From contig NW_021836146.1 in assembly GCF_006345805.1 (NCBI RefSeq), positions 186,001 to 250,000 of the forward strand: a stretch of 64,000 nt of DNA, read 5' to 3'. Positions 1,121 through 61,090 of the stretch are shown piece after piece (position 1 is the first letter of the stretch; every line of letters begins with the position of its first letter). The translations under genes were made by a program, and so were the position numbers. The notes beneath the pieces were generated by a model, which saw nothing but the letters and a program-made list of their open reading frames with translations, was not told the origin of the DNA and did no database searches. This stretch comes from Octopus sinensis. Taxonomy: Eukaryota.

Positions 1121-1259
1121 CTGATAGGAATGGAAGCGAGGACATTCAGGAGAGTAAGAGGAGAGAAGAGAGAGGAAGAAGCAAGAAAGGAAAGAATAAG
1201 TGAGGAGAGAGAAAAGAAAGCAAGAAATATATTATTAATATAAATTATTGGAAAATTAT

Positions 1260-1660
1260 AGGCGCAGGAATGGCTGTGTGGTAAGTAGCTTACCAACCAC
1301 ATGGTTCCGGGTTCAGTCCCACTGCGTGGCATCTTGGGAAAGTGTCTTCTACTAAAGCCTCGGGCTGACCAAAGCCTTGTGAGTGGATTTGGTAGATGGA
1401 AACTGAAAGAAGCCTGTCGTATATATGTATATATATGTATGTGTGTGTGTGTATGTTTGTGTGTCTGTGTTTGTCCCCCTAGCATTGCTTGACAACCGAT
1501 GCTGGTGTGTTTACGTCACTTAGCGGTTCGGCAAAAGAGACCGATAGAATAAGTACTGGGCTTACAAAGAATAAGTCCCAGGGTCAATTTGCTCGACTAA
1601 AGGCGGTGCTCCAGCATGGCCGCAGTCAAATGACTGAAACAAGTAAAAGAGAAAAAAAAA
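1260..1660 (+). mobile_element. tRNA-derived SINE family A, full length
   Basis: A-box GGCTGTGTGGTAAG, B-box GGTTCAGTCCC, (TA)(TG) linker, 3' module ending GAAACAAGTAAAAGAG; many copies in the window. Confidence 0.9.
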
Positions 1661-8269: not shown

Positions 8270-9400
8270 ACCATCCCTTATATGATGATGGGTGCCGGTG
8301 AGGAGGGTGGTGTTGGAGAGGTAAGGAGAAATGCGGCAGCATGGGCTGGAGCAGAGGAATGAGCCAGTTGGGAGGTTGGGTTAGGGAAGAAGCTGTGGAC
8401 CAAGAGGTCTTGTAGGTTGTGGGCTCATTTGAAGGAGGGGAGGAGTCGGTTAGGGAAGATGTGCAAAGTGGAGGATTCAGACTGGAGTTGCTGGAAGGCT
8501 CAGAGAATGGTGCATTGGAGAGGTAAGGTGGTGGGATGGTAGGTGAGGGAAAACCGGAGATGGTGGGGTGAGTACAGGGGAGAGAGCAGATGCACGGTCT
8601 ATGGAATGTGTTCTGGCAAGTGCGGTGTGGATAGTGGTGAGGGGATATTCACGTAGGATGAAGTGGCGAGCATGAGTTGAGACTGAGTCTCAAAGTCATG
8701 GACGTCACTACAGGGCCTACATAGACGGAGGAATTAGGAATAGGGGATGGAAAGCTTGGTGCGTTTAGGGTGGGAGGAGGAGAAGTTGAAGAATGAGTGT
8801 GAGTCTGTGTGTTTGTAGTGGATGGAGGTGGTGAGAGTGGAGTGATGAATGCTGACTGAAATTTCAAGAAAGGAGACAGAGGTGTCAGAGATAGTAGAGG
8901 AGAAGTGGAGGGCAGAATGAAAAGATTTGACAAAAGAGAGGAAGGAATGTAGATGTTCACGGGTGAGTGAGGTCACACCGATACAGTCGTCAAAATAACG
9001 GCCATATAGTTCGGGAGTGGGACCAGTGAAACTTGAGAATATTTGGGCCTCAGTGTAGCCAACTAACAGGTTCACATAGTTAGGGCCCATTCTCGTTCCC
9101 ATGGCCACTCCCAAGAGCTGCTGGTAAAAATCACCAGTGAACGAGAAGCAGTTGAGTGAGAGGACAGGTTCAGACAGACGAATAAGTGTGAATGTGTCGG
9201 GTGTGGTGTTGGGTCAAAGGTCAAGGAAATGTTGGAGTGCACGCAGCCCCTAGTGGTGAGGGATCACCGTGTAAAGGCTCTGGATGTCGAGAGTGAAGAG
9301 AAGTTTAGAAGGGCCAGGAAGGAAGGAGAAAGAGTTCAACAAACAAAGAGCATGGTTGGTGTCGAGGATGTGAGAGGGGAGGGAAGCCACTGGGGGGGGG
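8270..9400 (-). mobile_element. Penelope-like retroelement remnant (reverse transcriptase and thumb, degenerate)
   Basis: Minus-strand translation gives LFTLDIQSLYTVIP, GVAMGTRMGPNY, YGRYFDDC, SIHYKHTDSHSFFNFSSSHP..TKLSIPYS, LTYHP and HNLQDLLVHS, typical PLE RT and C-terminal motifs; stops and frameshifts present. Confidence 0.85.
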
Positions 9401-11110: not shown

Positions 11111-11443
11111 GGTGCATAGCTCAGTAGTTAGAGCATCAGGCTCACAATCACGAGGTGGTGAGTTCGATTCTCAGACTAGGCCCATGTGTTGTGTTTTTCA
11201 GCAAGACACTTTATTTCACATTATTCCAGTCCACTCGGCTGTAGAAATGAGTTGCAGCATCACTGGTGTCAAGCTGTACCAACCTTTACCTTTCGTTTGG
11301 ATAACTTCAGTAGCATGGTGAGAGGAGGCTGGTAAGCATGGGTGACTGATGGTCTTCCATAAACAAACTTGCCCAGACTTGTGCCTGAGCAGGGAACTTT
11401 CTAGGTGCAAACCCATGGTCATTCATGACCGAAGGGGGTCTTT
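11111..11443 (+). mobile_element. tRNA-derived SINE family D
   Basis: tRNA-like head GGTGCATAGCTCAGTAGTTAGAGC...GAGTTCGATTC; a 5'-truncated minus-strand copy lies at about 9553-9757. Confidence 0.8.
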
Positions 11444-11455
11444 ACAATATTTTAC

Positions 11456-11494
<39 letters not shown>

Positions 11495-13569: not shown

Positions 13570-14842
13570 TATCTATGCACATACACAGACACATATATAA
13601 AAGTATATAACATTAATGAAGCATATTCACATCTAAGCATTTAACAGCAGGAAGGGCATTCAGCTGTAAAACAATACCTCAAAACATTCATCTAACCCAT
13701 ACTAGTAAGGAAAATGGACATAAAAACAAAGGGATGAATACATATAAACATATGCATATCTGTACGACACACACACACATTCATGTGTGCATGTATATAT
13801 GCCTGTGTATATGCATATATGTGCATACATATGTTTAAAATCTTTTATATATATATATATATATATTCAAGTATATATGCATATTATAAATTTCTAATGT
13901 TAATAGTAATGAGGAACAGTAAAATAATTCAACAAAAATGCGATGTAAATCTAAATCACTATGAAATCTTCTTGTAGTTGTTAACTAAGGATTGAGAATA
14001 TATTATATTTAATGCTTTTGGGAAACAGTAATAGAACAATACTAATGCTGATTTCTTAATTATGCATGAAGCTGTTCTTGGGAGGCAAGTAGTATACTTA
14101 AGTGAAATATTATCACCAACTTGAACTGATAATAATAATAATATCAATAATAATAGTCATTTACTTTGCATGTGTCATCACACGGAAACTGTCAATTTTC
14201 TGTAACTGTGTTTTAATTTCAATTACTAATTAAACTAAAATGACTGATAACAATCTAGTAAGTGACAAAAATGTTCACTAACTTAATTACCAAATATCAT
14301 TGACATTTGAGTTTTAAATTCTGCATTATTTTTAATATTCTTGTATTATATATTTACTACTGTTTTTTCTGTGGTTTCATTTTACTATTTTATTTTCTCC
14401 TTAGACCATTAAGACATTCAAATGTAGCTTTTATTCTATGATTTTCAGTGAAAATTTCATTAAGATTCTTATGAATCTGAAACGCTACACTTTTGAACTT
14501 TTTTTTGATTTTATTTATTTATTTTTTTTAATATTTTTGCTTTTTATAAAATCTATCTTTAGAACTGTATGAAACTCTTCTGAAATGAAGGCAATAAAGA
14601 ATGTAAAGAATGTAATTAATGAGAGGATGTGTATTGTTAAATTAAAGTTCCTTGGTTTCTAGTGTGTACAATGAGAAATAAAAGATTAAAAGATAGGATA
14701 TTGGCTTCCTCTTTGTTTTACATAGCACTCACTGTGAGTATATCCATCATATTAGAATATAACATACTTCTATTTCCCTTTTTCCTTTCTTTAATATCTA
14801 TCAAGAATACCTCATTCCAAATATATGCTATAATAGTTCTCC

Positions 14843-15060
14843 TTGTCTTGTGTGGGGCATTCTCCGTCTGGGTTGCGGATCAGTGGAATAAGCTGCCGGA
14901 TGAGATAGTGAAGATGCCGACGACCGCTCGGTTTAAAGTCTCCCTTGACCACAAATGGCCTGAACTCTTTGCATGAACACCACCCTGTACATAACTCCAT
15001 GTCCCTCTACATGGCCTTGCTTTTTGCTTTTTGAGCCAAAAAATTAACTTAACTTAGCAT
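14843..15060 (+). mobile_element. CR1/L2-clade LINE 3' end fragment
   Basis: GAFSVWVADQWNKLPDEIVKMPTTARFKVSLD* matches the FS.RV..WN.LP..V.....FK..LD C-terminal motif, followed by a 3' UTR-like tail. Confidence 0.75.
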
Positions 15061-27547: not shown

Positions 27548-27989
27548 CTACTACTACTATGGCAATCTCTCAAGGTTGAGGATGATGGTCTTCGCGCAAA
27601 TTTATTGGTGAGTCTGCAGGTGACTGATAAGACCAATTCTTGCTCGAAAAGATCGGTCACAGGGCGGACATCTAGTGCTGGAAGGGAGAGTCGCACGTGG
27701 CTGTTGTTGGCGCTCCTTCCGTCGTCGTCTTTTCTCCTCCAGCTCTGCAGACCTTTTCGACTCGAAATTCGCCGTTCCTTCATGGATGGTGGTTTTCCAG
27801 AGTGGTCTGTTTTTTGCCGTTTCCTCCCAGTTGGTGAAGTCAATGTCACACTTTTTGAGGTTCGATTTCAGAGAGTCCTTGTAGCGTTTCTTCTGGCCTC
27901 CTTTTGTACGCTTGTAGACCTCAGTGATGAAATCCAACACCGTCTGAAGTGTGCAGGAACAGCTTTTGGCAAGCTTCAAACAAGAGTTT
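27548..27989 (-). mobile_element. RTE-clade LINE, 5'-truncated, with an inverted 5' segment and 13-bp TSD
   Basis: Minus strand: KRTKGGQKKRYKDSLK...CPPCDRSFRARIGLISHLQTH then an (AGT)n tail. Plus strand 27914-27989: VDLSDEIQHRLKCAGTAFGKLQTRVF, an upstream RTE region. TTGACTAATAGTA at 27535-27547 and 27990-28002. Confidence 0.9.
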
Positions 27990-29606
27990 TTGACTAATAG
28001 TAATATTACAGCTAATATAATTTTTAAAAACCAGCTGAACAGTGTACTCATAAGAATTTATATAAGTCAGTGTATGCATATAAGTTGTATATACATGTTT
28101 GATATGAAAACCACTTTGTATGTGAGTAAAAAAAAAAAGAGAAGAATGCTTATCTTACATTAGCTTTTTGTGGGGGTAGGGTGGTTGTTGTTAAGCAGCA
28201 AAATAAGGACAAAGCTCTTAGGGCCTGCAGACCAATGAAATTGAATTTCTGCTCAGTTTGAATCTGGAAGGCCAATATTTGTGAAGAAAACATAGCTATG
28301 GAAGGTATTTGAGAAGATTGCATTCAAAGAGGTGGGTGAGTTGGTTTTTCTACTATGATACTGAAGATTAGATAGGATGCAGTGTTATAAGTGTGTTTTC
28401 ATGTTTGTCTTAGTATTGATGAATGAAACTAATTTATCACATTCCTATTGCAGAATATTTTCTGAGCCTCCATTTATAGACATTAACCATATTTGGTAGG
28501 AAGCATGTCAACTGCAAGAAAATTATGACTATGCAAGAAGTTAAGGAGTAAACGTGTTATCATATGCACAGAAGTTTGGATAGTTGAAGGTAACAGCAAA
28601 CAGTTGTTGCTATACCCAAGATGTATAGAAATTGTAATTTTGGTTAAAAGAACAAGGACCAGAGTAATGAAACAATGTGAAAAGAAAGCCCAAATACAAA
28701 ACATGAGAAAGATTAAAGTCTGTAGGTAGACAGCTTTGCTACAAGTTTTTCATGGTAGTTATGGTTAAATGTTTGAATTCATGTGAAAAGCAACGTATGT
28801 ACTTTCATCTAAGTTTTCAAGAGTAACAGACCAATTTGTATAATGGGAGAATAGAGACATCAAATGTTTTCTGGCTGCATGTAGACTAAGGTGGCAATAA
28901 CTGAGAATTGAGTGGAAATGAAGCTTGTAAAGATAAACATTTAAGACTATCTTCAACAACTATATAAGTGATTATACTTATGTATAATACATGAATTATG
29001 TTTGGAAAACATTCTTAAAAGTAAATTCATTCATAAATTATATTTTGCATAAAGTCAGAAATATGTTTTATTATAGATTTTGATGGGAGAAAACCCCAAA
29101 TTTTTACATTGCAACTTCTCTCAAAAACTATCTGTAAATTGTTTTAAGAAGTTCCAGTTTTTCAAAGTGTTTTCTAGTCACACACACAATAATATCAGTC
29201 TCCCAAAACCCTCATTGCTTGGATGACTTGAGAAATGATTAAATGATTTTATATAAAAAAAAAAATACTAATGACAATAATAATAAAATTAACAACAATG
29301 ATGATGATGATAACTTCATATTTTTCTCTCTGAATAATCCTAGAGCATTTTGCCGAATCCTATAAAATCATATTGTAAAATCAAAGCTTTAATAATATTA
29401 ATCTTGATTTTAATCATTATCACTTTTACATCCACTTTTTTCATGCTAGCATGGGTTGGATGAATCTTCTTAAAGCTATATTTTACAATCAGATACCTTT
29501 TCTGATGCTAATCTTTGTTTTCAAACAAGATATATCACTCCACATCTTTGCAGCTCATACAACAATATGATTATTTCATTTGATACACATTTTCCCTCAC
29601 CTATAT

Positions 29607-29833
29607 CTCTCTTTTACTTGTTTCAGTCACTTGACTGCGGCCATGCTGGAGCACCGCCTTTTAATCAAGCAACTCGACCCCGGGTCTTATTCTTTTGTAA
29701 GCCCAGTACTTATTCTATCGGTCTCAGTACAGTACTTATTCTATCGCTAAGTAACGGGGACATAAACACACCAGCATCGGTTGTCAAGCAATGCTAGAGG
29801 GACAAACACAGATACACAAACACACATATATAT

Positions 29834-29865
<32 letters not shown>

Positions 29866-30037
29866 CATATATACAACAGGCTTCTTTCAGTTTCCGTCTA
29901 CCAAATCCACTCACAAGGCTTTGGTCGGCCCGAGGCTATAGTAGAAGACACTTGCCCAAGGTGCCACGCAGTGGGACTGAACCCAGAACCATGTGGTTGG
30001 CAGAGAAGCTACTTACCACACAGCCACTCCTGCGCCT
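29607..30037 (-). mobile_element. SINE family A, full length
   Basis: Reverse complement of the 1260-1660 element. Confidence 0.9.
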
Positions 30038-31269
30038 ATCTATACTTGATTCATTTTTCATAACTGGTTTACAGAATGCTATAAACCCAGTCCAGTGTCA
30101 TTTAATACCAACAACATTTCTGATAGCTATAAGTAGAAACTCACTTAAGTTTGAATCCCAACATGTTTAATCAATCTTCTTTTTATCTACTTCATTTTTA
30201 TATATACACTCACACATACATACTAATTTTGTATTTAAAAGGTAACTTAGCCATTCAAAAAGTAGGTAACAATAAAATAAGTCCCAGACTGAAATAAGTT
30301 CATTCACTGATATTATTGACTAGAAAACTAAAAACTAAAAAGATCACTGATTATGATACCCTACCATGGAAGCAGTACATTAACTGAAGTCAATAAAAGA
30401 ATAACAAAATATAAAGGGGAAATAGCATGTTTATATTTTATATGTTTATATATTGTTGTTATCAAAGTTTGACAGAGAGGAAATAAACTTGCACAATGAT
30501 CAAGGATGCTACCAAGGGGAACCTATATGCTTAAACTGTTAGAAACAGGAGTAAGATATCCCTGAGGTCATACCCTACCCTTTAATATAAAAACAGGTAG
30601 AGTTGGCTATAGTCTCAGATAAATGAAAAAAGATGGGCTAGTTGCTGCTTCAAAGCCTTTAATCATTCATCTGCTTGAAAAGGTATACACCTAGAGATAA
30701 ACAGCAATATCATGCAATTAGATCATTCACAATTTAATAACACTTTAATACTTAATGCAAAATAATTTATTCATCAACAAATAGTTGGTAACAGGAAAAT
30801 AATCTGTTGTATATACAGATGTAAACAAATAATATGCCAGGATAGTGTTACAGCATCCAACAGTCAGTCACTTTTTCATATGTCTATCATAAAAGGAATG
30901 TATTTTATGCATGAGCAGCTTAATTACGGCTCATAAAGAGCATACGATCTACTGACAGATTTTCAAACACAAGCAGATTTCATGAAACTGACCTCTGTAA
31001 CCATGAGAGTTGATCATTTCTAATATAAGGCATGAAACTTTGGAACAAAAAATATAAGAAGTTGCGACACACATATATATATAGTTTAAAATTCAAAATT
31101 ATTTTTCAAAAGTAAATCTATAGAAAGTAGACCCAATTGACCAATTTGAGAATGTTGAAATGTGTTAGGTCTAAAGCTGCATAACCCGAAATTTTGTTTT
31201 TATATTTGTACTATAGAAAAATCAGTTTAGTATACAATTCATGTCCAAGGTGTGTGTGTGTGTGTGTGT

Positions 31270-36976: not shown

Positions 36977-37677
36977 TAGGGGAGTCTGAAAGTCTTGTTA
37001 ATCCCTACCAAAAAGTAATGACAACAATAAAACAAGTAATGCTGAAAGCCAAAGCACGAACTGGATTTAGTTTATTCACTTTGACACTGTCACACATCAA
37101 GAAAGCCTGTATGACCACCATTATTTTCGTCGCACAAAATGAGGTGGTGCCATGTCCTATGTGACATTTTTCGAAGCTGTGCATTGATGATTGCTTCAAA
37201 GGCTCTCTGAACGGTATCCTTCAACAGAAGGGTATTCTGGTATCATTCATGTGAAACTCTCTCCTTGATAATATCCCACAGAGCATTATCGCAAGACGTG
37301 AGGTCTGAACTTCTGGGAGGCCAATCGACAGGTGCTGGAAGTTGTTGAGATCCTTGCCCTATCCATCTATCCTGCAAAACTTCATTTAGGTATTCTTGGA
37401 CAGTGACTAGCATAGTGGGGTAGAGCACCATCTTGTTGAAACCAACAATCATTCAGGTCAATATTCAACCTTGGGAGTTGTGGAACAAGCCACTCCCTTA
37501 ACATGGCTAAGTAAGATTGTTGGTTAACAGTGCCCTCGAAGAAATAGGGTCCTATCAGGTACTTGATGTGATGGCCCAAATCATTACATGTGGGGGTTGT
37601 GCTAGAATAAAAAATAATGATAATAATGACAATAATAAGCAATATGTAGGGAGTATTAAGATTTTTGGACCACCTTG
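36977..37677 (-). mobile_element. Internally deleted Tc1/mariner-superfamily transposon with transposase remnant
   Basis: IGPYFFEGTVNQQSYL, CWFQQDGALPHYA, RWIGQG and WPPRSSDLTSCD motifs; degenerate TIRs flanked by TA at both ends. Confidence 0.85.
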
Positions 37678-38029
37678 TACAATAAGAAATGAATTGCATG
37701 GAGTAATTCAACTGACTCTATAAATCTTGATCAGTTATACTGAAATTAAAGAAGGTCTTGTAATTTAAATATTTACAAGTTAAAAGCTCAGAAAACTTTA
37801 CATTTAGTGGCATTACTTGAAACATGTGAAATCTGCTATCCTTAATATCATCATACAGCCCCTATGCAGCCACATTCTTTCACATGTAAATATGTATGCC
37901 GGAAGACTGTTTCAACATACTCCAAAATTCTATCTCAATTGTGCCCATCCTTTTCTGCTTCTCCTGCATGAGAAAAAAATATTCTGAATACTGCTTCTAT
38001 ATCACATCATTGGAATTTTGATCACAGAA

Positions 38030-38520: not shown

Positions 38521-40589
38521 AAGAAAGAAAGGAATATCAAAAACAATCTTTTATAAATGCTGTTTTGTTGTAAGAAACACTATCAAAACTGCCTGGAATC
38601 ATTATCTGCCTTACTGTGCTCTATACAGTACCAATAGCTAATTACAAATCTTTAGAGTGAGCAACAGTATTTGAAGCAAAACTAGACCACCAGACATGTT
38701 GACTACAAATTCTCTCAATAAGTTTAATGATATCACTATGCTATGAGCATACTCAGGAATAGCTTAGTCATTAATAACAAGAATATAGTTCAAGTAATTA
38801 TACATTTTCTCATATAGTAAACATTTCAAATAACCATGCAACTCAAAACATTGTGCCAGAAACATTTTTTTTTTAACTTCAATAAATACCATAGTGTAAT
38901 GGTAATCTTTATACAATTTAGTTTTAATTTCAAGTCATAGTTCTTAATATCATTTACATTGCTAATTCCATGTAAAAATCAACTCATCTTCTCTCTTGTA
39001 TTCCCCGAAGGTCTAACATTCTATGAATAAAAATAAAAATAATACTGTTCAATCAATATAATTGTATAATCTATTTGTAAAATCAGAAGCAAAAATTACT
39101 CAAAGTTTTGAGAAATATGAAATAATAAAAAAAACTAAGAAAATATCAACAATTATCTATGAGTGATGTTATACAGCATATTTGTTTTTATATTATATAT
39201 TACTTGTTTCAATTTATTTAGACTGCCGCCATCCTGGGGCACCATCTTGAGGAATTTTTAGCCAAAGGAATTGATCTCAGCACTTGAAATTTTTTTAAAG
39301 CTTGGTACTTATTCTATTTGTCTCTTCTTGCCAAACTGCTAAGTTATGTGGATGTAAACACACCAACAATGCTTGTCAAGTACTGTGTCTGATGGTACAA
39401 GTCTCCATACTCATTATTATTATTAATACTAATATACACTCACACACACATGCATATATACATATATGTATGTATGTGTATGTATGATGATCTTCTTTCA
39501 GTTTCTGTCAAACATATTCATTCAAGGTCTTGTTTGACTCAAGGCTACAATAGAAGACACTTGCTGAAGGTGCCATGCAGTGGGACTGAACCCAGGACCA
39601 TGTTGTTGGGAAGCAAACTTCTTAAATCAAACAGCCACACCTTCTGAATTTTAAACTAATTTTTTTTAAATCATCTTATACTATAAAGTAACTTAAAATT
39701 TAATATAGGGCACATGCATGCAATATACAATCAGAATATTAAAACAGTAGTATCTTATAAATTCATATTTATGAAGTAAAAAACAAATATTTTACAGAAA
39801 GTGCATTTTTATCTAAATGAAATGATGGCACTCTGAAACAATAACTGAACACTTTCAGCAAATAATTTTCAACAAAATGAAGTTTCACTTGTAACAACCA
39901 ATCAATTCAATTATAAATAATCACTTGATCCATCTCATTACATTCTTCCCAACAATTATAAGAAATTTTGCATTTAAAGAAAGTTAAGAAAAATATTTTT
40001 AGAAAACAATTTAAAGTTGTTTTTTTTTCTTTCACTCTTGATTACACAAACTAATTGTTATTGTTTATTATGCATTATTGCAGGTTTTGATTATTTTTAT
40101 TATTTTAAACTTCACAATTTAAATTTTTCCCTAATTAAAGGTAGTAGCGATAGCTGTGGCAAACGATACTAATTTTGTCTCTTGGTCAATTGTAAAAGAA
40201 ATTAAAATTAATTTCAGTAACTCCAATTCAACGGAGGTGTGTGTATACAGTTAAATGAAGAGAATAACTAACCTAAATAGCATATTGCTGTTTATTTTAT
40301 CAACACCAAGACAACTCTGATTAGTTTTTAAATCAAATCATTGAGACAATGAGCATCAGTTTGAAGGAATATATTTTATCTATAGACAAAGGGATAAAAT
40401 TTACTTCCTAAATAAATTCACCACGAAATTTAACACCACACCAAAGAAACAATTATTAAGAAATAGTCATTTTTATAGTAAATATAAGTAGATAATATAA
40501 CAATATTTACATATTTCAACTGCATCATTATTTCATATAATTTATTCAAATTTAATTCGATATTTCACCAACAACTTGTGCACGTACTA

Positions 40590-42834: not shown

Positions 42835-43625
42835 AGAGGTGCAGGCATGGCTGTGTGGTAAGAAGCTTGCTTCCCAACCACATGATTAGGTTCAGTCCCA
42901 CTGCATGGGACCTTGGGCAAGTGTCTTCTATTATAGCCTCAGGCTGACGAAAGCCTTGAGTGGATTTGGTAGACAGAAACTGAAAGATGCCCATCGTATG
43001 CATATATATATATATATATATATATCATCATCGTCGTTGTTTAACGTCCGCTTTCCATGCTGGCATGGGTTAGACTGTTTGACTGAGGGCTGGCAAGCTA
43101 GAAGGCTGCACCCGGCTCCAATCCGATCAGGCAAGGTTTCTACAGCTGAATGCCCTTTCTAACACCAACCACTCTGAGAGTGTATATACATGTATATATT
43201 TGTGTCTGTGCCTGTCCCCACCCACCATCACTTGACAACCGATGTTGGTGTGTTTACATCTCCATAACTTAGCAGTTCAGCAATAAAGACCTATAGAATA
43301 AGTACTAGGGTTACAAAGAATAAGTCCCGGGGTCGATTTGTTTTACTAAAGGCAGTGTTCCAGCATGGCCACCGTCATATGACTGAAACAAGTAAAAGAA
43401 TAAAAGAATACACACACATACATACTTATGTATGTGCAAATCTGTGCCTATATATTTGTGTGTGTGTGTGTGTGTGTATATGTATTTAGCGGTTCGGCAA
43501 AAGAGACCGATAGAATAAGTACTGGGCTTACAAAGAATAAGTCCCGGGATCGAGTTGCTCGACTAAAGGCGGTGCTCCAGCATGGCCGCAGTCAAATGAC
43601 TGAAACAAGTAAAAGAGTAAAAGAG
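42835..43625 (+). mobile_element. Nested SINE cluster: family A interrupted by an inverted family B copy, plus a second family A 3' module
   Basis: A 5' half 42835-43010; B on minus strand 43025-43185; A 3' half 43200-43410; CpG-intact A 3' half 43485-43625. Confidence 0.8.
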
Positions 43626-48237: not shown

Positions 48238-49527
48238 CTGCATAGTAAAGAAGAGTAAAATCTTGTTTCTAAATAATTATCCTCACATTGCAATGATAAA
48301 TCTCCGAGCGAGATGTAAACAGTAAGCGCTAGTAGACTATCCTCACATTAATTTATCTAAATCACTCGAAACCAAGAACTAACATTTTAATTGTATTGTA
48401 AGGAGAAAAACTCTACATATGTTACAAAAAATGTTGTGTGAAAAAAGTGTAGTAGAATACAGATATATATGTAACACATAGGAATTACATTTTATAATTT
48501 ATATTTAACTACAAAAAGTCAAATGAAGATCTACACAAGAACCATGAAACTTAACAACAAATAAGAAAAAGATATAAAACTGCAGCTTAAATGATGAAAC
48601 AACTGTTTAATTGAAAAAGTGTTATTTCCAATAATGAAACCAAGTAAAGGGTCCAAAATAGGTGCAGGAGTGGCTGTGTGGTAAGTAGCTTGCTTACCAA
48701 CTACATGGTTCCGGGTTCAGTCCCACTGCGTGGCACCTTGGGCAAGTGTCTTCTACTATAGCCTCGGGCTGACCAAAGCCTTGTGAGTGGATTGGTAGAT
48801 AGAAACTGAAAGAAGCCCGTCGTATATATGTATATATATATATATATAATATATATATATATATATAAATGAGAGAGGCATGAAGCAAGAGTCATGTAAC
48901 TGAAGTAAAATGACAATTATTTTATACTACTGATAAAAACCAAAAGGTATTCCAATCAAAATTAGACAATTTAGCTTAGTTTTTTGACTCTTGGATATTC
49001 AATTTGGATTATGAGACAACTTAAGTTTCTAAATTAATCTACAAACTGAAAAGGTCTAAGCTGCACAACTGCACAAGGGAGGAGAAAGTGAAAGAGCAAA
49101 AGATAATATAGGAGAATAAAAGTGCAAGGAGAATAAAAGTGCAAGGGCAGAAGAAATGACATAAAGCAAGTGTGAGTACTCTCACTTCACATTGTTTCAA
49201 TTCAAATGGTGACCATGTATATTTTGCTTATGCCTGTTTTTATATTTTCAACTTCAAAAAGAAAATTAAAACATTTCAAATTTCCAGAAAGTGAAATACT
49301 AATACTTTCATTTCTTAATACATATTACTTGCATTGTATTTCTTATCATTCGATGTTCAGAACATGAATCCCTACTTTTACTATTGTATACACAATACTT
49401 TGCTTATTTTACTTGTGTATGTTCGAACTTTATTAGCATTAGACACTTTCACCGACACCAGTGACTTTTGCAGTTTCATTTCCCTTTTTTTTTGTGCTTC
49501 ATTACTGAAATCTGAAAGGTTCCTTAC

Positions 49528-49586: not shown

Positions 49587-50008
49587 CTGCATAGTAAAGA
49601 AGAGTAAAATCTTGTTTCTAAATAATTATCCTCACATTGCAATGATAAATCTCCGAGCGAGATGTAAACAGTAAGCGCTAGTAGACTATCCTCACATTAA
49701 TTTATCTAAATCACTCGAAACCAAGAACTAACATTTTAATTGTATTGTAAGGAGAAAAACTCTACATATGTTACAAAAAATGTTGTGTGAAAAAAGTGTA
49801 GTAGAATACAGATATATATGTAACACATAGGAATTACATTTTATAATTTATATTTAACTACAAAAAGTCAAATGAAGATCTACACAAGAACCATGAAACT
49901 TAACAACAAATAAGAAAAAGATATAAAACTGCAGCTTAAATGATGAAACAACTGTTTAATTGAAAAAGTGTTATTTCCAATAATGAAACCAAGTAAAGGG
50001 TCCAAAAT

Positions 50009-50173
50009 AGGTGCAGGAGTGGCTGTGTGGTAAGTAGCTTGCTTACCAACTACATGGTTCCGGGTTCAGTCCCACTGCGTGGCACCTTGGGCAAGTGTCT
50101 TCTACTATAGCCTCGGGCTGACCAAAGCCTTGTGAGTGGATTGGTAGATAGAAACTGAAAGAAGCCCGTCGTA

Positions 50174-50228
<55 letters not shown>

Positions 50229-50945
50229 GCATGTATATTTGTGTGTCTGTGCTTATCCCCCTAACATCACTTGACAACCGATGCTGGTGTGTTTATGTCC
50301 CTGTCACATTAGCGATTCAGCAAAAGAGACCGATAGAATAAGTACTGGGCTTACAAAGAATTGCTCAATTAAAGGCGGTGCTCCAGCATGGCCACAGTCA
50401 AATGACTGAAACAAGTAATAGGGTAAAGAGAGTAAATGGGACTATGAAGAGTCAAGAATATCTAGAAACCAGAAGCTTATAATTATATCAACTTTTGTTA
50501 GTAAAAATAAATTTGCAGTATATTTCAAAAATTTTCCACTCCATAGGCAGTGTGCTGTGTGGTAAGATGTTTACTTTCCAACCACAAGGTTCTGGGTTCA
50601 GTCCCCCTGCATGGTACTTTGGGCAAGTGTCTTCTACTAAAGCCTTGGGCTGACCAAAGCTTTGTCAGTAGATTTGATAGATGGAAACTGAAAGAAGCCC
50701 CTCGTACATATATATATATCATATATATATGTGTGTGCCTGTGTTTGTCCCCCACCACTGCTAAACAACCGGTGTTGGTGTCTCTATAGCCCTGTAACTT
50801 AGTGGTTCAGCAAAAGAGACTGATAGAATAAGTCCTAAGCTTAAAAAAAAAAAGATAAGTACTGGAGTCAATTCATTCAGCAAAAATTCTTCAAGACGGT
50901 ACCCCAGCATGGCCACAGTCTAATGACTGAAACAAGTTAAAACAA
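50009..50945 (+). mobile_element. Two adjacent SINE family A copies
   Basis: About 50009-50430 and 50545-50945; the 5' half of the first is also duplicated at about 48660-48840. Confidence 0.85.
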
Positions 50946-51815: not shown

Positions 51816-52687
51816 AGGCAATCCATCGTTTTTTGGTCTCCGAAAACTGAAACTATTATTTCGGCAAGTTACATATAAAATTTTTATTTCTTCAATGTTT
51901 ATTTTTTTGCAGCTGAACAATGAAAAACACGGTTGTCCGCACGCACGCACACACAACTCTCACACAGTCGTCTTTCATTTGAACGAGCGACTTTTGAACA
52001 GTGACACACGTCAACACACTCGCACACACCTATAGATACACATACATATATAAATATACATATTTTCTTTTCACGAATCGCGTATGTATGTAATGAATGA
52101 ATGAACGAACGTATGTATGTAATGTATGTATGTTTGTATGTATGTAATGAATGAATGTTTGTATGTAATGAATGAATGTATGTATGTAATGAATGTATGT
52201 TTGTATGCATGTATGTATGTAATGAATGAATGAGTGTATGTATGTATGTAATAAATGAGTGTATGTATGTAATGAATGTATGTATGTATGTATGTAATAA
52301 ATGAATGAATGTATGTAATGAATGAATGAATGAATGAATGTATGTATGTATGTAATGAATGTATGTTTGTATGTAATGAATGAATGAATGAATGTATGTA
52401 TGTAATGAATGTATGTTTGTATGTATGTATGTAATGAATGAATGAATGAATGTATGTATGTATGTATGTATGTAATGAATGTATGTTTGTATGTATGTAT
52501 GTATGTAATGAATGAATGAATGTATGTATGTAATGAATAAATGTATTTATGTATCTTTGTATGCATGCATATATGCATTCATGCATGCATGTATGTATGT
52601 AGCGGTCTGTGTGTAAGCTGAAGAAGGAAATAAAGAACTTGCCAAACAAAGTTTTAGTTTTCGGAGACCAAAAACGATGGATTGCCC
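51816..52687. mobile_element. MITE with about 60-bp TIRs, 6-bp TSD and an internal (ATGT/ATGA)n array
   Basis: GGCAATCCATCGTTTTT(T)GGTCTCCGAAAACT at both ends in inverted orientation; ATTATC at 51810-51815 and 52688-52693. Confidence 0.75.
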
Positions 52688-55274: not shown

Positions 55275-55508
55275 CTATTTCTTTATTATCCACAAGGGGC
55301 TAAACATAGAGGGGACAAACAAGGACAGACATAGGTATTAAGTCGATTACATCGACCCCAGTGCGCAACTGGTACTTAATTTATCGACCCCGAAAGGATG
55401 AAAGGCAAAGTTGACGTCGGCGGAATTTGAACTCACAACGTAACGACAGACGAAATACGGCTACGCATTTCGCCCGGCGTGCTAACGTTTCTGCCAGCTC
55501 GCCGCCTT
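55275..55508 (-). mobile_element. SINE family C, full length with 9-bp TSD
   Basis: Head GGCGGCGAGCTGGCAGAAACGTTAG, B-box GAGTTCAAATTCC, core GCCTTTCATCCTTTCGGGGTCGATAAATTAAGTACCAG; GTGGTAAAC at 55266-55274 and 55509-55517. Confidence 0.9.
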
Positions 55509-57330: not shown

Positions 57331-57454
57331 GACCATGATACCACAAAACTTGACTTAAAAAAGGGATTTAGATAATCCTATCAGGTGGTGCTGTTAAGTT
57401 AGATATGGCCTGTACCAATCTTCGGTCGAAACAAAAGTTTGTTTATATATATAT

Positions 57455-57487
<33 letters not shown>

Positions 57488-57623
57488 TACATACATATAT
57501 ACATACATACATATATACATACACACACACACACACACATATGTACATAGATATATATATACACACACACACATATATATATGCATATATATATATATAT
57601 ATATTCATATATATATTATAGAT

Positions 57624-57770
57624 GCCTATATATATTATAGATGTATTATATATTATATATGCCTATATATATTATAGATGTATTATATATTATATATGCC
57701 TATATATATTATAGATGTATTATATATTATATATGCCTATATATATTATAGATGTATTATATATTATAGA
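57624..57770. repeat. 37-bp minisatellite (about 4 units) within a larger (TA)n-TTATAGATGCA array spanning about 57020-59470
   Basis: GCCTATATATATTATAGATGTATTATATATTATATAT starts at 57624, 57661, 57698 and 57735. Confidence 0.85.
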
Positions 57771-57772
57771 TG

Positions 57773-57806
<34 letters not shown>

Positions 57807-58064
57807 TATATATATATATATATAATATATATATAATAGAAATATTAAAATTACTAAGTCTCTCTAAAAGAGAACAGCGGCAGCGTTCCCGGAAAATAAT
57901 AGTTATCGCCATACTAATATGGCATTCTTATAAAAATAAGAATAAAGCTGTCCGCTTATTAGCTCCATGAGGCCATCGCCTAAAGTTAGCTATTTGATAC
58001 ACAAACTGTATCCATATAACCTTCGAACAAGTGAGGTCAGTCGCTCCACACTACTTGACCGGCA

Positions 58065-58106
58065 GCTACAGACGCGTTTCGGGGTATTGCCCCTTTTCAA
58101 TGCAGC
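58065..58106 (-). ncRNA. Type I hammerhead ribozyme, copy 1 (U3-A8 variant core)
   Basis: Minus strand reads GCUGCA UUGAAAA GGGG CAAUA CCCC GAAA CGCG UC UGUAGC: stem I, core, stem II with loop, GAAA, palindromic stem III, GUC cleavage triplet (cut after 58071). Confidence 0.85.
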
Positions 58107-58350
58107 GTAGCCAGCCAGTAGGTGTCGCTTCCGACAATCTCTGTTCGATGGTTTTATTTACCTAGTTTCGGTGGAATACATCCACTTGTTTTCAATAATA
58201 GAAATATTAAAATTACTAAGTCTCTCTAAAAGAGAACAGCGGCAGCGTTCCCGGAAAATAATAGTTATCGCCATACTAATACTTACCGAAACTAGGTAAA
58301 TAAAACCATCGAACAGAGATTGTCGGAAGCGACACCTACTGGCTGGCTAC

Positions 58351-58392
58351 GCTGCATTGAAAAGGGGCAATACCCCGAAACGCGTCTGTAGC
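58351..58392 (+). ncRNA. Type I hammerhead ribozyme, copy 2 (U3-A8 variant core)
   Basis: Same 42-nt motif as copy 1; predicted cleavage after C58386. Stem I extends through a UAC/U internal loop into GGCUGGC/GCCGGUC and CUACU/AGUAG. Confidence 0.87.
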
Positions 58393-58712
58393 TGCCGGTC
58401 AAGTAGTGTGGAGCGACTGACCTCCCTTGTTCGAAGGTTATATGGATACAGTTTGTGTATCAAATAGCTAACTTGAGGCGATGGCCTCATGGAGCTAATA
58501 AGCGGACAGCTTTATTCTTATTTTTATAAGAATGCCATATTAGTATGGCGATAACTATTATTTTCCGGGAACGCTGCCGCTGTTCTCTTTTAGAGAGACT
58601 TAGTAATTTTAATATTTCTATTATTGAAAACAAGTGGATGTATTCCACCGAAACTAGGTAAATAAAACCATCGAACAGAGATTGTCGGAAGCGACACCTA
58701 CTGGCTGGCTAC

Positions 58713-58754
58713 GCTGCATTGAAAAGGGGCAATACCCCGAAACGCGTCTGTAGT
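58713..58754 (+). ncRNA. Type I hammerhead ribozyme, copy 3
   Basis: Same motif; predicted cleavage after C58748, 362 nt after copy 2. One C is missing in the 3' strand of stem I (TGTAGTGCC vs TGTAGCTGCC). Confidence 0.8.
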
Positions 58755-59391
58755 GCCGGTCAAGTAGTGTGGAGCGACTGACCTCCCTTGTTCGAAGGTT
58801 ATATGGATACAGTTTGTGTATCAAATAGCTAACTTGAGGCGATGGCCTCATGGAGCTAATAAGCGGACAGCTTTATTCTTATTTTTATAAGAATGCCATA
58901 TTAGTATGGCGATAACTATTATATATATATATATGTTCATATATATATGTTATAGATGAATATATATAGACATATATATATATGTTATAGATGCATATAA
59001 TATATATTATATATATATATATATATATTCATATATATATTATAGATGCCTATATATATTATACATGTATTATATATTATAGATGCATATATATATATAT
59101 ATTATAGATGCACATATAAATATAGATGCATATATATATATATATATAGATGCACATATAAATATAGATGCATATATATATGTATATATATTATAGATGC
59201 ACATATATATATATATTATAGATGCACACATATATATATTATAGATGCACACACATATATATATATATATATATATTATAGATGCATATATATATATATA
59301 TAGATGCATATATATATTATAGATGCACACATATATATACTATATATATATATATATATATATATAGATGCATATATATATATTATAGATT

Positions 59392-59458
<67 letters not shown>

Positions 59459-60036
59459 TATAGATGCATGTGTGTGTATTTTATGTACGTGCGCATACAC
59501 ACACATACATATATTTTGATTTTGTTCTCAATTTTCTCGTGAAATGTACGTCTGAATTTGCTAAAGTGCAGCCATTTCCACGCGTTCTTCGCAACATGAA
59601 CATAATCGTGTGCGATAAATAACAAAACAAATAACTAATATTAGCAATACAAAATCAAAAAAAAAATCGAGAAACTTACGAAAGCGATTGATTTTAAAAG
59701 TCAATCAAAAAAGAAAAAAAAGTTTCACAGATGTATAAAACGAAGAAAGAATTCTATGTTAATCCGTGTAAAGTAAAGTGGCTGAAGAAGTCGTCTGCAA
59801 CGGCAAGTTCTGGCGGGAGATTAACTTCACGAACAAAACTGTGTTAGAAGAGAAGAAAGAAGCTGCAACGCGTCAAGGCTTTGAAATCGTATTTGGATGT
59901 TAGGAAACTTGTATGTATGGCAACCAGTTTAACTTGTCATATTGACTTCAAAATGATACACGAAGACCGGTCGAAAAATTTGATCGAAACCAAATAATCC
60001 GTTTTAAGTAGAATACTACTAGTAAAATGCATATAT

Positions 60037-60440
60037 GTGGCTGTGTGGTAAGTAGCTTGCTAACCAGCCACATGGTTGCGAGTTCAGTCCCACTGCGTGG
60101 CATCTTGGGCAATTGTCTTCTGCTATAGCCCCGGGCCGACCAATGCCTTGTGAGTGGATTTGGTAGACGGAAACTGAAAGAAGCCTGTCGTATATATGTA
60201 TATATGTGTATTTATGTGTGTGTGTGTGTTTGTGTGTCTGTGTTTGTCCCCTTCGCATTGCTTGACAACCGATGCTGGTGTGTTGACGTCCCCGTCACTT
60301 AGCGGTTCGGCAAAAGAGACCGATAGAATAAGTACTGGGCTTACAAAGCATAAGTCCCGGGGTCGATTTGCTCGACTAAAAGGCGGTGCTCCAGCATGGC
60401 CGCAGTCAAATGACTGAAACAAGTAAAAGAGTAAAAGAGT
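60037..60440 (+). mobile_element. SINE family A, young CpG-intact copy
   Basis: Same consensus, with most CpGs retained. Confidence 0.9.
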
Positions 60441-60676
60441 ATATATATATATATATATATATATGTAATATTAATAAAAATATTTTCTACGTAACATTCT
60501 TCTCAGTTATGTACATAACTGAAACAAAATATATCAATCTGTTGAGAAATTAATGAACTTACTGAATAGAGTAAGGTCAGAATTCATAGAAACCAAATGA
60601 TGGTCTTTTGCATGCTTCTCCTCGAGTCAGCTTAAGCCAGCAGATTTATAATAAAAGGAGTTCAAAGCATTAATCA

Positions 60677-61090
60677 TATCTATTTCTTTATTACCCACAA
60701 GGGGCTAAACACAAAGGGGACAAACAAGGACAGACATAGGTATTAAGTCGATTACATCGACCCCCAGTGCGTAACTGGTACTTAATTTATCGACCCCGAA
60801 AGGATGAAATGCAAAGTCGACCTCCGCGGAATTTGAACTCAAAACGTAACGGCAGACGAAATACCTATTTCTTTATTACACACAAGGGGCTAAACACAGA
60901 GGGGACAAACAAGGACAGACATAGGTATTAAGTCGATTACATCGACCCCCAGTGCGTAACTGGTACTTAATTTATCGACCCCGAAAGGATGAAAGGCAAA
61001 GTCGACCTCGGTGGAATTTGAACTCAGAACGTAACGGCAGACGAAATACCGCTAAGCATTTCGCCCGACGTGCTAACGTTTCTGCCAGCT
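60677..61090 (-). mobile_element. Head-to-tail SINE family C dimer
   Basis: A near-full copy (about 61090-60866) runs directly into a 5'-truncated copy (about 60865-60677). Confidence 0.85.

What the first reader, a model, noticed from the sequence alone, without database searches (positions are those of the whole stretch)
57833..58922. Candidate retrozyme: tandem 362-nt repeat with three hammerhead ribozymes
Seen: a non-coding 362-bp unit in 1.24 copies (left) and 1.76 copies (right), each carrying a complete type I hammerhead fold (stem I GCUGCA/UGUAGC, stem II GGGG/CCCC, GAAA, GUC triplet). The two plus-strand cleavage sites (58386, 58748) are exactly one unit apart. Established: tandem repeats of about 170-400 nt with type I hammerheads (metazoan non-LTR retrozymes, and Penelope pseudo-LTRs) are transcribed, self-cleave to monomers and circularise. 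Inference: this is a self-processing RNA element, possibly yielding a 362-nt circular RNA and mobilised in trans by a Penelope-type RT (a PLE remnant is at 8.3-9.4 kb). I do not recall this family being described in cephalopods, but I cannot search to confirm.
Basis: partly seen in the sequence, partly recalled or inferred. Interest (0 to 1): 0.92.

Follow-up and report, generated by a model that had tools for sequence, protein, structure and literature searches.

The report
Hammerhead-ribozyme retrozyme insertion in a TA microsatellite
A 362-bp non-coding repeat carrying a self-cleaving hammerhead RNA motif lies as two head-to-head partial tandems inside a TA-rich microsatellite; it is a new example, probably from an octopus genome, of the known animal "retrozyme" class of small mobile elements.

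Summary
A 362-bp unit lies at 57833-58281 (minus orientation, 1.24 copies) and 58285-58922 (plus orientation, 1.76 copies). The copies differ at only three positions. Each of the three hammerhead sites has a full type I fold, and the two plus-strand cleavage sites are 362 nt apart.

This is a paired U3-A8 change of the invariant C3-G8 pair. No Rfam hammerhead model detects the motif.

Three results still support a real hammerhead. My own descriptor expects 0.003 chance hits per window. A covariance model built only from the published Schistosoma N79 ribozyme ranks the three sites first (E about 0.01). The 362-nt monomer folds far better than shuffles (z = -7.7).

The locus has the shape of a Penelope-like integration: a partial tandem plus an inverted truncated copy in (TA)n. 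Both outer ends stop at the same heptamer, CTATTAT.

The best reading is an animal non-LTR retrozyme copied from a circular or multimeric RNA. Cleavage, circles, copy number and covariation could not be tested, because no other copy was found in any collection. I file it as a new member of a known kind, of moderate interest.

The parts
57833..58281 (-). Left arm: 1.24 copies of the 362-bp unit in minus orientation (unit positions 254-362, then 1-340, read on the minus strand)
58282..58284 (.). 3-nt filler CTT between the 5' ends of the two arms. It matches neither arm's continuation. The centre is asymmetric: unit position 254 faces unit position 1.
58285..58922 (+). Right arm: 1.76 copies of the unit in plus orientation (unit 1-362, then 1-277, with C108 deleted)
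58065..58106 (-). Hammerhead 1 (type I, U3-A8 core). C17 is at 58071, so predicted cleavage lies between 58071 and 58070 on the minus strand.
58351..58392 (+). Hammerhead 2: GCUGCA-UUGAAAA-GGGG-CAAUA-CCCC-GAAA-C-GC-G-UC^UGUAGC. Predicted cleavage follows 58386.
58713..58754 (+). Hammerhead 3: same core, with predicted cleavage after 58748. A 1-nt deletion in the 3' strand of helix I removes either the last G-C pair or the bulged U. The model score falls from 18.1 to 14.9 bits.
58387..58748 (+). Predicted excised 362-nt monomer RNA. Helix I extends into a rod of about 55 bp that holds the two ends together.
57833..57839 (-). Outer (3') end of the left arm: CTATTAT, running straight into (TA)n
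58916..58922 (+). Outer (3') end of the right arm: the same heptamer CTATTAT, running straight into (TA)n
58555..58561 (+). Internal CUAUUAU site 1 (unit 271-277), in a predicted 23-nt unpaired stretch. It corresponds to the end point of the right arm.
58618..58624 (+). Internal CUAUUAU site 2 (unit 334-340), which forms a predicted 7-nt hairpin loop. It corresponds to the end point of the left arm.
57444..57832 (.). Left flank: (TA)n plus a 37-bp minisatellite containing TTATAGATGC. It has the same orientation as the right flank and is the insertion target.
58923..59462 (.). Right flank: the same (TA)n / TTATAGATGC array, in direct orientation

Best explanation
The locus is one insertion of an animal non-LTR retrozyme. 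This is a small non-coding element whose RNA carries a Schistosoma-like type I hammerhead with a covarying U3-A8 core.

Shown by the sequence:
- A 362-bp unit forms two head-to-head partial tandems inside a (TA)n array.
- Each hammerhead site has a 6-bp helix I flanked by UAC on one strand and U on the other.
- Helix II is 4 bp, begins with a G-C pair, and closes with the loop CAAUA.
- GAAA is present. Helix III is minimal and palindromic (ACGCGU). The cleavage triplet is GUC.

Inferred mechanism:
- A multimeric plus-strand transcript folds each hammerhead at the tip of a local rod of about 55 bp.
- Two hammerheads pair through the palindromic helix III and cleave after C17, at 58386 and 58748.
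[quoted passage not shown] Extended helix I holds them together, and a host RtcB-type ligase circularises the RNA.
- A Penelope-like RT/GIY-YIG enzyme nicks a (TA)n target.
- The TA-rich DNA ends anneal to exposed CUAUUAU loops of the RNA and prime reverse transcription from both target strands (twin priming).
- Each cDNA runs for more than one unit, so the template was circular or multimeric. The two cDNAs join head to head with a 3-nt filler.
For: Repeat anatomy.

Hammerhead evidence:
- My descriptor finds exactly these three sites, against 0.003 expected per shuffled window.
- A covariance model built only from the published N79/Sm1 ribozyme (sequence from PMC12550524) was searched unfiltered over both strands of the window. 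It ranks the three sites first, at 18.1, 18.1 and 14.9 bits with E of 0.012 to 0.11. The next hit scores 11 bits with E of 1.5.
- Alignment to N79 shows the same UAC, 6-bp helix, core, 4-bp helix, CA(A)AUA loop and GAAACGCG layout.
- The U3-A8 covariation is documented in Schistosoma PLE hammerheads (PMC4209133). That paper also gives the canonical metazoan architecture: helix I 6 bp, helix II 4 bp, and helix III 1-2 bp with a 2-4-nt palindromic loop.

Folding:
- The hammerhead domain has z = -3.6.
- The monomer folds at -132.7 kcal/mol, z = -7.7.
- The 638-nt arm has z = -13.
- In cofolding, two domains form a 6-bp helix III in trans: -69.7 against 2 x -31.8 kcal/mol.

Insertion evidence:
- Both outer ends lie at the only two CTATTAT heptamers of the unit, and both sites are predicted to be unpaired.
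- PLE insertions are described as partial tandems with an adjacent inverted 5'-truncated copy, and several PLE clades prefer (TA)n (PMC8557442).
- A PLE in locus L002, related to the window's remnant, shows the same inverted-copy layout.
- A 2026 preprint argues that animal retrozymes derive from PLE terminal repeats.
- Size and GC content (42%) fit the class.
Against: - No Rfam hammerhead family matches, even at E<=10 on 86 nt.
- Two of the nucleotides normally invariant in the core are changed, and the activity of this exact variant is unknown.
- My descriptor was written after I had seen the U3-A8 core.
- The independent model gives only a moderate and roughly calibrated E-value.
- Only one locus exists in the window, and no related copy turned up in any collection. 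There is therefore no covariation evidence, no family and no copy number.
- No target-site duplication can be read in the microsatellite.
- No promoter was identified, and there are no pol III A/B boxes.
- The only PLE in the window is a dead fragment.
- G-U pair counts do not clearly favour the plus strand (7 against 5).
Confidence: 0.7

Rival explanations
1. The locus is a fossil. The repeat descends from a hammerhead-bearing element, but the C3U and G8A changes and the tiny helix III leave the ribozyme inactive. Nothing is processed today.
For: Rfam models fail to match. Minimal PLE hammerheads cleave poorly in vitro (PMC4209133). The third copy has a deletion in helix I. There is a single locus and no relatives were found.
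Against: The two core changes restore a Watson-Crick pair, and the other 11 core positions and all helices are intact. Random decay would rarely produce this. The copies are 99-100% identical, so the insertion is young. The monomer fold is far more stable than shuffled controls.
Confidence: 0.17
2. The structure arose at the DNA level. Either it is satellite DNA amplified by unequal crossover and then inverted, or it is the solo terminal repeat of an autonomous Penelope-like element. It is not a retrotransposed independent retrozyme.
For: Hammerhead repeats were first described as satellites. The 2026 preprint proposes local tandem amplification of PLE termini.
Against: A simple inversion would leave inverted flank sequence between the arms, and only 3 nt are there. 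Both outer ends fall on the same heptamer, which recombination does not predict. There is no RT or EN coding sequence in or beside the unit. The period is 362 bp, not the 3-4 kb of a PLE.
Confidence: 0.08
3. The inverted repeat is the functional feature. Transcription across both arms gives a hairpin dsRNA of about 450 bp that feeds small-RNA silencing. The hammerheads are incidental.
For: The arms are 99-100% complementary with a 3-nt spacer. Long-hairpin miRNA models give sub-threshold hits, for example MIR6217 at 80.6 bits against a gathering score of 110.
Against: Those hits reflect only the shape of the hairpin. The inverted layout is the usual by-product of PLE-type integration. This reading does not explain the hammerhead or the fold of the monomer. 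It is also compatible with the main explanation.
Confidence: 0.04
4. The locus is an assembly or library artefact (a fold-back chimera), or the hammerhead-like motif is a chance match.
For: Head-to-head duplications with tiny spacers are typical of fold-back chimeric reads.
Against: The palindrome is not symmetric: unit position 254 faces position 1, and the arms have different lengths and different outer ends. The flanks are in direct, not inverted, orientation. The arms differ at two bases. The chance expectation for the motif is 0.003 per window, before counting the UAC/U loop and the extended rod.
Confidence: 0.01

Closest known systems
Metazoan non-LTR retrozymes (Acropora, Mytilus, axolotl; Cervera and de la Pena 2020, PMC7229834)
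   Same: Non-coding tandem units of 170-400 bp with low GC, one type I hammerhead per unit, and a highly self-paired monomer predicted to circularise. PLEs are the presumed helper.
   Different: The core carries U3-A8 instead of C3-G8 and escapes the Rfam models. Only a 1.76 + 1.24 copy inverted locus was seen, not a long array. Expression and circles are untested. The host is probably a cephalopod, a group the searched papers do not report for this class.
Schistosoma mansoni Sm-alpha / Sm1 hammerhead (and its engineered N79 form)
   Same: A 6-bp helix I flanked by UAC and U, a 4-bp helix II starting with G-C, loop CAAAUA against CAAUA here, and GAAAC...GUC. A model built from N79 alone finds the sites.
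   Different: Here the internal loop of helix I is 3x1, whereas I recall 4x4 in Sm1. Loop 2 is one base shorter. Helix III is 2 bp with a 2-nt loop. The core is U3-A8.
Minimal hammerheads of Penelope-like element pseudo-LTRs, including the Cercyon U3-A8 variant (PMC4209133)
   Same: The U3-A8 covariation, a palindromic helix III that implies action as a dimer, and an association with PLE-type tandem/inverted insertions.
   Different: Those motifs lack helix III and the loop-loop contact nucleotides, and they sit in the terminal repeats of coding PLEs. This one has the canonical architecture and no coding partner.
Newt/salamander satellite 2 hammerheads
   Same: A repeat of about 330 bp and a very weak palindromic helix III, so cleavage needs two copies.
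   Different: The sequence is unrelated. Those repeats form large arrays, and they carry a consensus core.
Plant LTR retrozymes
   Same: The life-cycle logic: hammerhead cleavage, a circular RNA, then reverse transcription by a helper.
   Different: They have type III hammerheads, LTRs, a PBS and a PPT, use Gypsy helpers, and have high GC. None of these features is present here.

Membership tests
Hammerhead ribozyme, type I | Three helices around the core, with helix I open and helices II and III capped | tested here: met
   Helix I is 6 bp and extends further. Helix II is 4 bp plus a 5-nt loop. Helix III is A-U and C-G plus a GC loop.
Hammerhead ribozyme, type I | Consensus core: C3 U4 G5 A6 N7 G8 A9, G12 A13 A14, A15.1-U16.1, H17 | tested here: not met
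   11 of 13 positions are met. C3 is U and G8 is A (UUGAAAA) in all three copies.
Hammerhead ribozyme, type I | A Watson-Crick pair between positions 3 and 8 | tested here: met
   U3-A8 is a covariation reported in natural Schistosoma PLE hammerheads. Tolerance of exchanges at this pair is reported by Przybilski and Hammann 2007. I saw only the title of that paper, and the full text is not held.
Hammerhead ribozyme, type I | A match to the Rfam hammerhead covariance models | tested here: not met
   No hit at gathering score, and none at E<=10 on 1.1 kb or on 86 nt.
Hammerhead ribozyme, type I | Similarity to a proven type I ribozyme by an independent structure-aware model | tested here: met
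   The model built from N79 alone gives 18.1 bits, E about 0.012, over the full model length, and these are the top three hits in the window. The calibration is rough.
Hammerhead ribozyme, type I | Site-specific self-cleavage | not testable with these tools
   This needs in vitro transcription of monomer and dimer constructs.
Metazoan non-LTR retrozyme | Tandem units of about 170-400 bp, each with a type I hammerhead | tested here: met
   The unit is 362 bp, with 1.76 copies direct and 1.24 inverted. The cleavage sites are 362 nt apart.
Metazoan non-LTR retrozyme | Non-coding, with low GC (<45-50%) and no LTR, PBS or PPT | tested here: met
   The longest stop-to-stop frame is 73 codons, with no protein homologue. 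GC is 42%. PBS and PPT were not searched for specifically.
Metazoan non-LTR retrozyme | A stable, highly self-paired monomer RNA | tested here: met
   -132.7 kcal/mol with z = -7.7, and the circular fold is -127.7 kcal/mol.
Metazoan non-LTR retrozyme | A multi-copy dispersed family in the genome | not testable with these tools
   There is one locus in 64 kb. No eukaryotic genome collection is on hand, and four collection scans and one ORF search found nothing.
Metazoan non-LTR retrozyme | Expression as linear and circular RNA | not testable with these tools
   No transcriptome data are available.
Penelope-like element (autonomous) or its pseudo-LTR | The repeats flank an RT plus GIY-YIG ORF | tested here: not met
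   There is no coding sequence in or next to the unit. The nearest PLE RT fragment lies at about 8.3-9.4 kb and is degenerate.
Penelope-like element (autonomous) or its pseudo-LTR | Insertion architecture: a partial tandem plus an adjacent inverted 5'-truncated copy, with a preference for (TA)n | tested here: met
   compared with the descriptions in PMC8557442 and with locus L002.

The most novel reading that the evidence does not exclude
This locus is a preserved record of how animal retrozymes integrate. A circular hammerhead RNA was reverse-transcribed by rolling circle from both strands of a PLE-type break in (TA)n, and each cDNA was primed on an exposed CUAUUAU loop. It would also be the first canonical, tertiary-stabilised type I hammerhead that works naturally with a U3-A8 core. 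If so, whole retrozyme families may be invisible to Rfam and to standard descriptors, in cephalopods and elsewhere.
Probability: 0.3. Interest if true: 0.55.

Novelty: new member of a known kind. Interest (0 to 1): 0.4.

Why it matters
Animal retrozymes are known, but how they integrate and which enzyme moves them are still inferred only from co-occurrence and from sequence similarity to PLE termini.

This single young insertion has three informative features. Both arms are longer than one unit. Both arms end at the same TA-like heptamer, which lies in predicted loops. The layout is the inverted-plus-tandem one typical of PLEs. Together these give structural support for priming by microhomology on a circular or multimeric RNA by a PLE-type enzyme.

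It also shows that a canonical-looking hammerhead with a covarying 3-8 pair escapes the Rfam models. Surveys that rely on the consensus core may therefore undercount such elements. If the source is an octopus, the class extends to cephalopods, whose genomes are rich in repeats and known for heavy RNA-level regulation.

Tried and rejected
- Rfam gave no hammerhead on the whole window, on 1.1 kb or on 86 nt. The only hits were long-hairpin miRNA models below threshold, which reflect the inverted repeat.
- TRF does not report the 362-bp period.
- I searched the 5.8-billion protein collection with all stop-to-stop frames of the unit joined together, hoping that called ORFs would lead to other copies. 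It gave no hit.
- Exact-pattern scans with the helix II bases left free found nothing. I ran two on metagenome contigs, one on prokaryotic genome contigs and one on viral contigs.
- Loci fetched through relatives of the window's transposon proteins (L001-L003) share nothing with the unit or the window. A relaxed minimal-hammerhead scan of L002 found none.
- Looking up a window ORF to identify the source record failed.
- There are no pol III A/B boxes and no tRNA-like sequence.
- The strand asymmetry of G-U pairs was too weak to use (7 against 5).
- I rejected the fold-back artefact, snap-back synthesis and a simple inversion, because the centre is asymmetric and the flanks are direct.
- Two papers that would bear on activity are not held: Przybilski and Hammann 2007, and Lunse et al. 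2017.

Full report
**Observation.** A 362-bp unit occurs as 57833-58281 in minus orientation (449 nt, 1.24 units) and 58285-58922 in plus orientation (638 nt, 1.76 units), with three bases (CTT) between the arms. The copies differ only by C141A and G191T in the left arm and by the loss of C108 in the third copy. No other copy, even a diverged one, lies in the 64-kb window. The unit has 42% GC, against 33% for the window. Its longest stop-to-stop frame is 73 codons, and none of its frames has a homologue in the protein collection.

**The hammerhead.** On the plus strand the motif reads GCUGCA-UUGAAAA-GGGG-CAAUA-CCCC-GAAA-C-GC-G-U-C^UGUAGC, with C17 at 58386 and 58748. The minus-strand copy has C17 at 58071.

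C3 is U and G8 is A, while the other eleven core positions are consensus. In the active structure C3 and G8 form a Watson-Crick pair (stated in PMC3884650). The same U3-A8 covariation has been described in hammerheads of Schistosoma Penelope-like elements (PMC4209133). Two changes that together restore a pair, in a motif otherwise intact, fit a functional variant better than decay.

No Rfam hammerhead family matches, at gathering score or at E<=10 on 1.1 kb or 86 nt. By that test membership fails.

Two other tests support the motif.
- My own type I descriptor allows a C-G or U-A pair at positions 3 and 8. It finds exactly the three sites, and 300 dinucleotide shuffles of the window gave 0.003 hits per window. 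I wrote this descriptor after seeing the sequence.
- I therefore also built a covariance model from the published Schistosoma-derived N79 ribozyme alone (sequence from PMC12550524). Searched without filters over both strands, it places the three sites first: 18.1, 18.1 and 14.9 bits, E of 0.012 to 0.11 with rough calibration, over the full model length. The next hit scores 11 bits with E of 1.5.

The alignment shows the same layout as Sm1/N79: UAC, then a 6-bp helix I, the core, a 4-bp helix II opening with G-C, the loop CA(A)AUA, and GAAACGCG; after the cut comes the 6-bp return strand followed by U. This matches the published description of canonical metazoan type I hammerheads: helix I 6 bp, helix II 4 bp, and helix III 1-2 bp with a 2-4-nt palindromic loop.

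**RNA structure.** The hammerhead domain folds as predicted, with z = -3.6. Helix III is too weak to form alone, but ACGCGU is a palindrome. Two domains cofold with a 6-bp helix III in trans, at -69.7 against 2 x -31.8 kcal/mol. This is the dimer-dependent mode known from newt, axolotl and PLE hammerheads.

The predicted excised monomer, 58387-58748, folds at -132.7 kcal/mol with z = -7.7. The circular form folds at -127.7 kcal/mol. Helix I continues into an imperfect rod of about 55 bp that closes the molecule and holds the two cleavage ends together, and a branched domain lies beyond it. In the 638-nt arm each hammerhead sits at the tip of its own local rod, with z = -13. The minus strand also folds well (z = -6.6), and the G-U counts do not separate the strands. 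The fold alone therefore does not prove selection on the plus-strand RNA.

**Architecture of the locus.** The element interrupts a TA-rich array. The same (TA)n and TTATAGATGC minisatellite lies on both sides in the same orientation. The 5' ends of the two arms meet at the centre, at different unit positions (254 and 1). The palindrome is therefore not symmetric, which excludes a fold-back read artefact and snap-back synthesis. A simple inversion would have left inverted flank sequence between the arms.

Both outer (3') ends stop at CTATTAT and then run into (TA)n. The unit contains only two such heptamers, at unit positions 271-277 and 334-340. Both fall in regions predicted to be unpaired, with P(unpaired) of 0.76 and 0.57 against 0.35 overall.

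PLE insertions are described as partial tandems with an adjacent inverted 5'-truncated copy, and several PLE clades prefer (TA)n (PMC8557442). A PLE fetched as a relative of the window's RT fragment shows the same inverted truncated copy upstream of its RT and GIY-YIG ORF (L002).

My inference is twin priming. Both strands of a break in (TA)n annealed to CUAUUAU loops, and each primed a cDNA longer than one unit. That requires a circular or multimeric template. Neither 5' end coincides with the cleavage site (unit 102/103), so the enzyme did not run off a cleaved linear monomer.

**Context.** The fragment at about 8.3-9.4 kb on the minus strand is a reverse-transcriptase remnant with several stop codons, truncated at both ends. 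Its relatives (up to 67% identity) carry RVT_1 and HTH_animal domains. One of them continues into a GIY-YIG endonuclease with the PLE zinc-finger-like linker.

The best named match to other transposon fragments of the window is an Octopus bimaculoides protein, at 82% identity over about 75 residues. This suggests an octopod or related cephalopod source but does not prove it.

**Limits.** No eukaryotic genome collection was available. One ORF-based search and four pattern scans found no relative, and the fetched loci are unrelated. I could not assess covariation among copies, family size, helper identity or expression.

**Comparison and novelty.** The element works like, and meets the testable criteria of, the animal non-LTR retrozymes described in a coral, a mussel and salamanders (PMC7229834, PMC7761336). 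A recent preprint derives these from PLE terminal repeats.

It differs in three ways: the U3-A8 core in an otherwise canonical hammerhead, its invisibility to Rfam, and a probable cephalopod host. No paper in the searched library reports hammerheads or retrozymes in cephalopods.

It is not a coding PLE, it is not one of the minimal pLTR hammerheads (helix III and the loop nucleotides are present), and it is not a plant LTR retrozyme. I file it as a new member of a known kind. Interest is moderate (0.4), mainly for the clean integration signature and the core variant.

Noticed in passing
window 8300-9400 (minus strand): A degenerate Penelope-like RT fragment with several in-frame stops, truncated before the GIY-YIG domain and bounded by microsatellites. 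Its relatives carry RVT_1 and HTH_animal domains.
   Followed up: yes
window 60676-61050; also 55275-55454: A 185-bp unit in two tandem copies (96% identical), with a third copy about 5 kb upstream (94%). It looks like an interspersed SINE-like repeat and carries no hammerhead.
   Followed up: partly
window 1258-1485, 29791-30039, 39441-39614, 42837-43019, 48658-48843, 50007-50192, 50554-50748, 60038-60258: At least eight copies of an interspersed repeat of about 230 bp, 73-92% identical, on both strands. It is probably the dominant SINE-like element of this genome. ARAGORN finds no tRNA in the window.
   Followed up: partly
window 48300-48700 and 49649-50049: A 100% identical direct duplication with a 1349-bp offset, which is either a recent segmental duplication or an assembly duplicate. 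It surfaced as two equal-scoring noise hits of the hammerhead model.
   Followed up: partly
window 52082-52601: A minisatellite of (GTAT)n/(GAAT)n with 25-29-bp periods. It produces long spurious ORFs rich in His, Thr, Tyr and Ile.
   Followed up: no
window 27602-28051 (minus), 37382-37711 (minus), 14662-14976 (plus): Other transposon remnants: a retrotransposon ORF tail with a weak C2H2 finger match, a mariner/Tc1-like transposase C-terminus, and an RTE-like tail. The family names are my own reading of the sequences. The best named relative is an Octopus bimaculoides protein at 82% identity.
   Followed up: partly
window 58108-58349, both strands: Sub-threshold Rfam hits to plant miRNA precursor families, for example MIR6217 at 80.6 bits against a gathering score of 110. 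They are caused only by the long inverted repeat and are false positives.
   Followed up: yes
L002 9644-9919 (minus) against 11169-11463 (plus): In an unrelated ENA contig, a PLE with an RT and GIY-YIG ORF has an inverted 5'-truncated copy of its endonuclease end immediately upstream. This is the same head-to-head layout as the window's element.
   Followed up: partly
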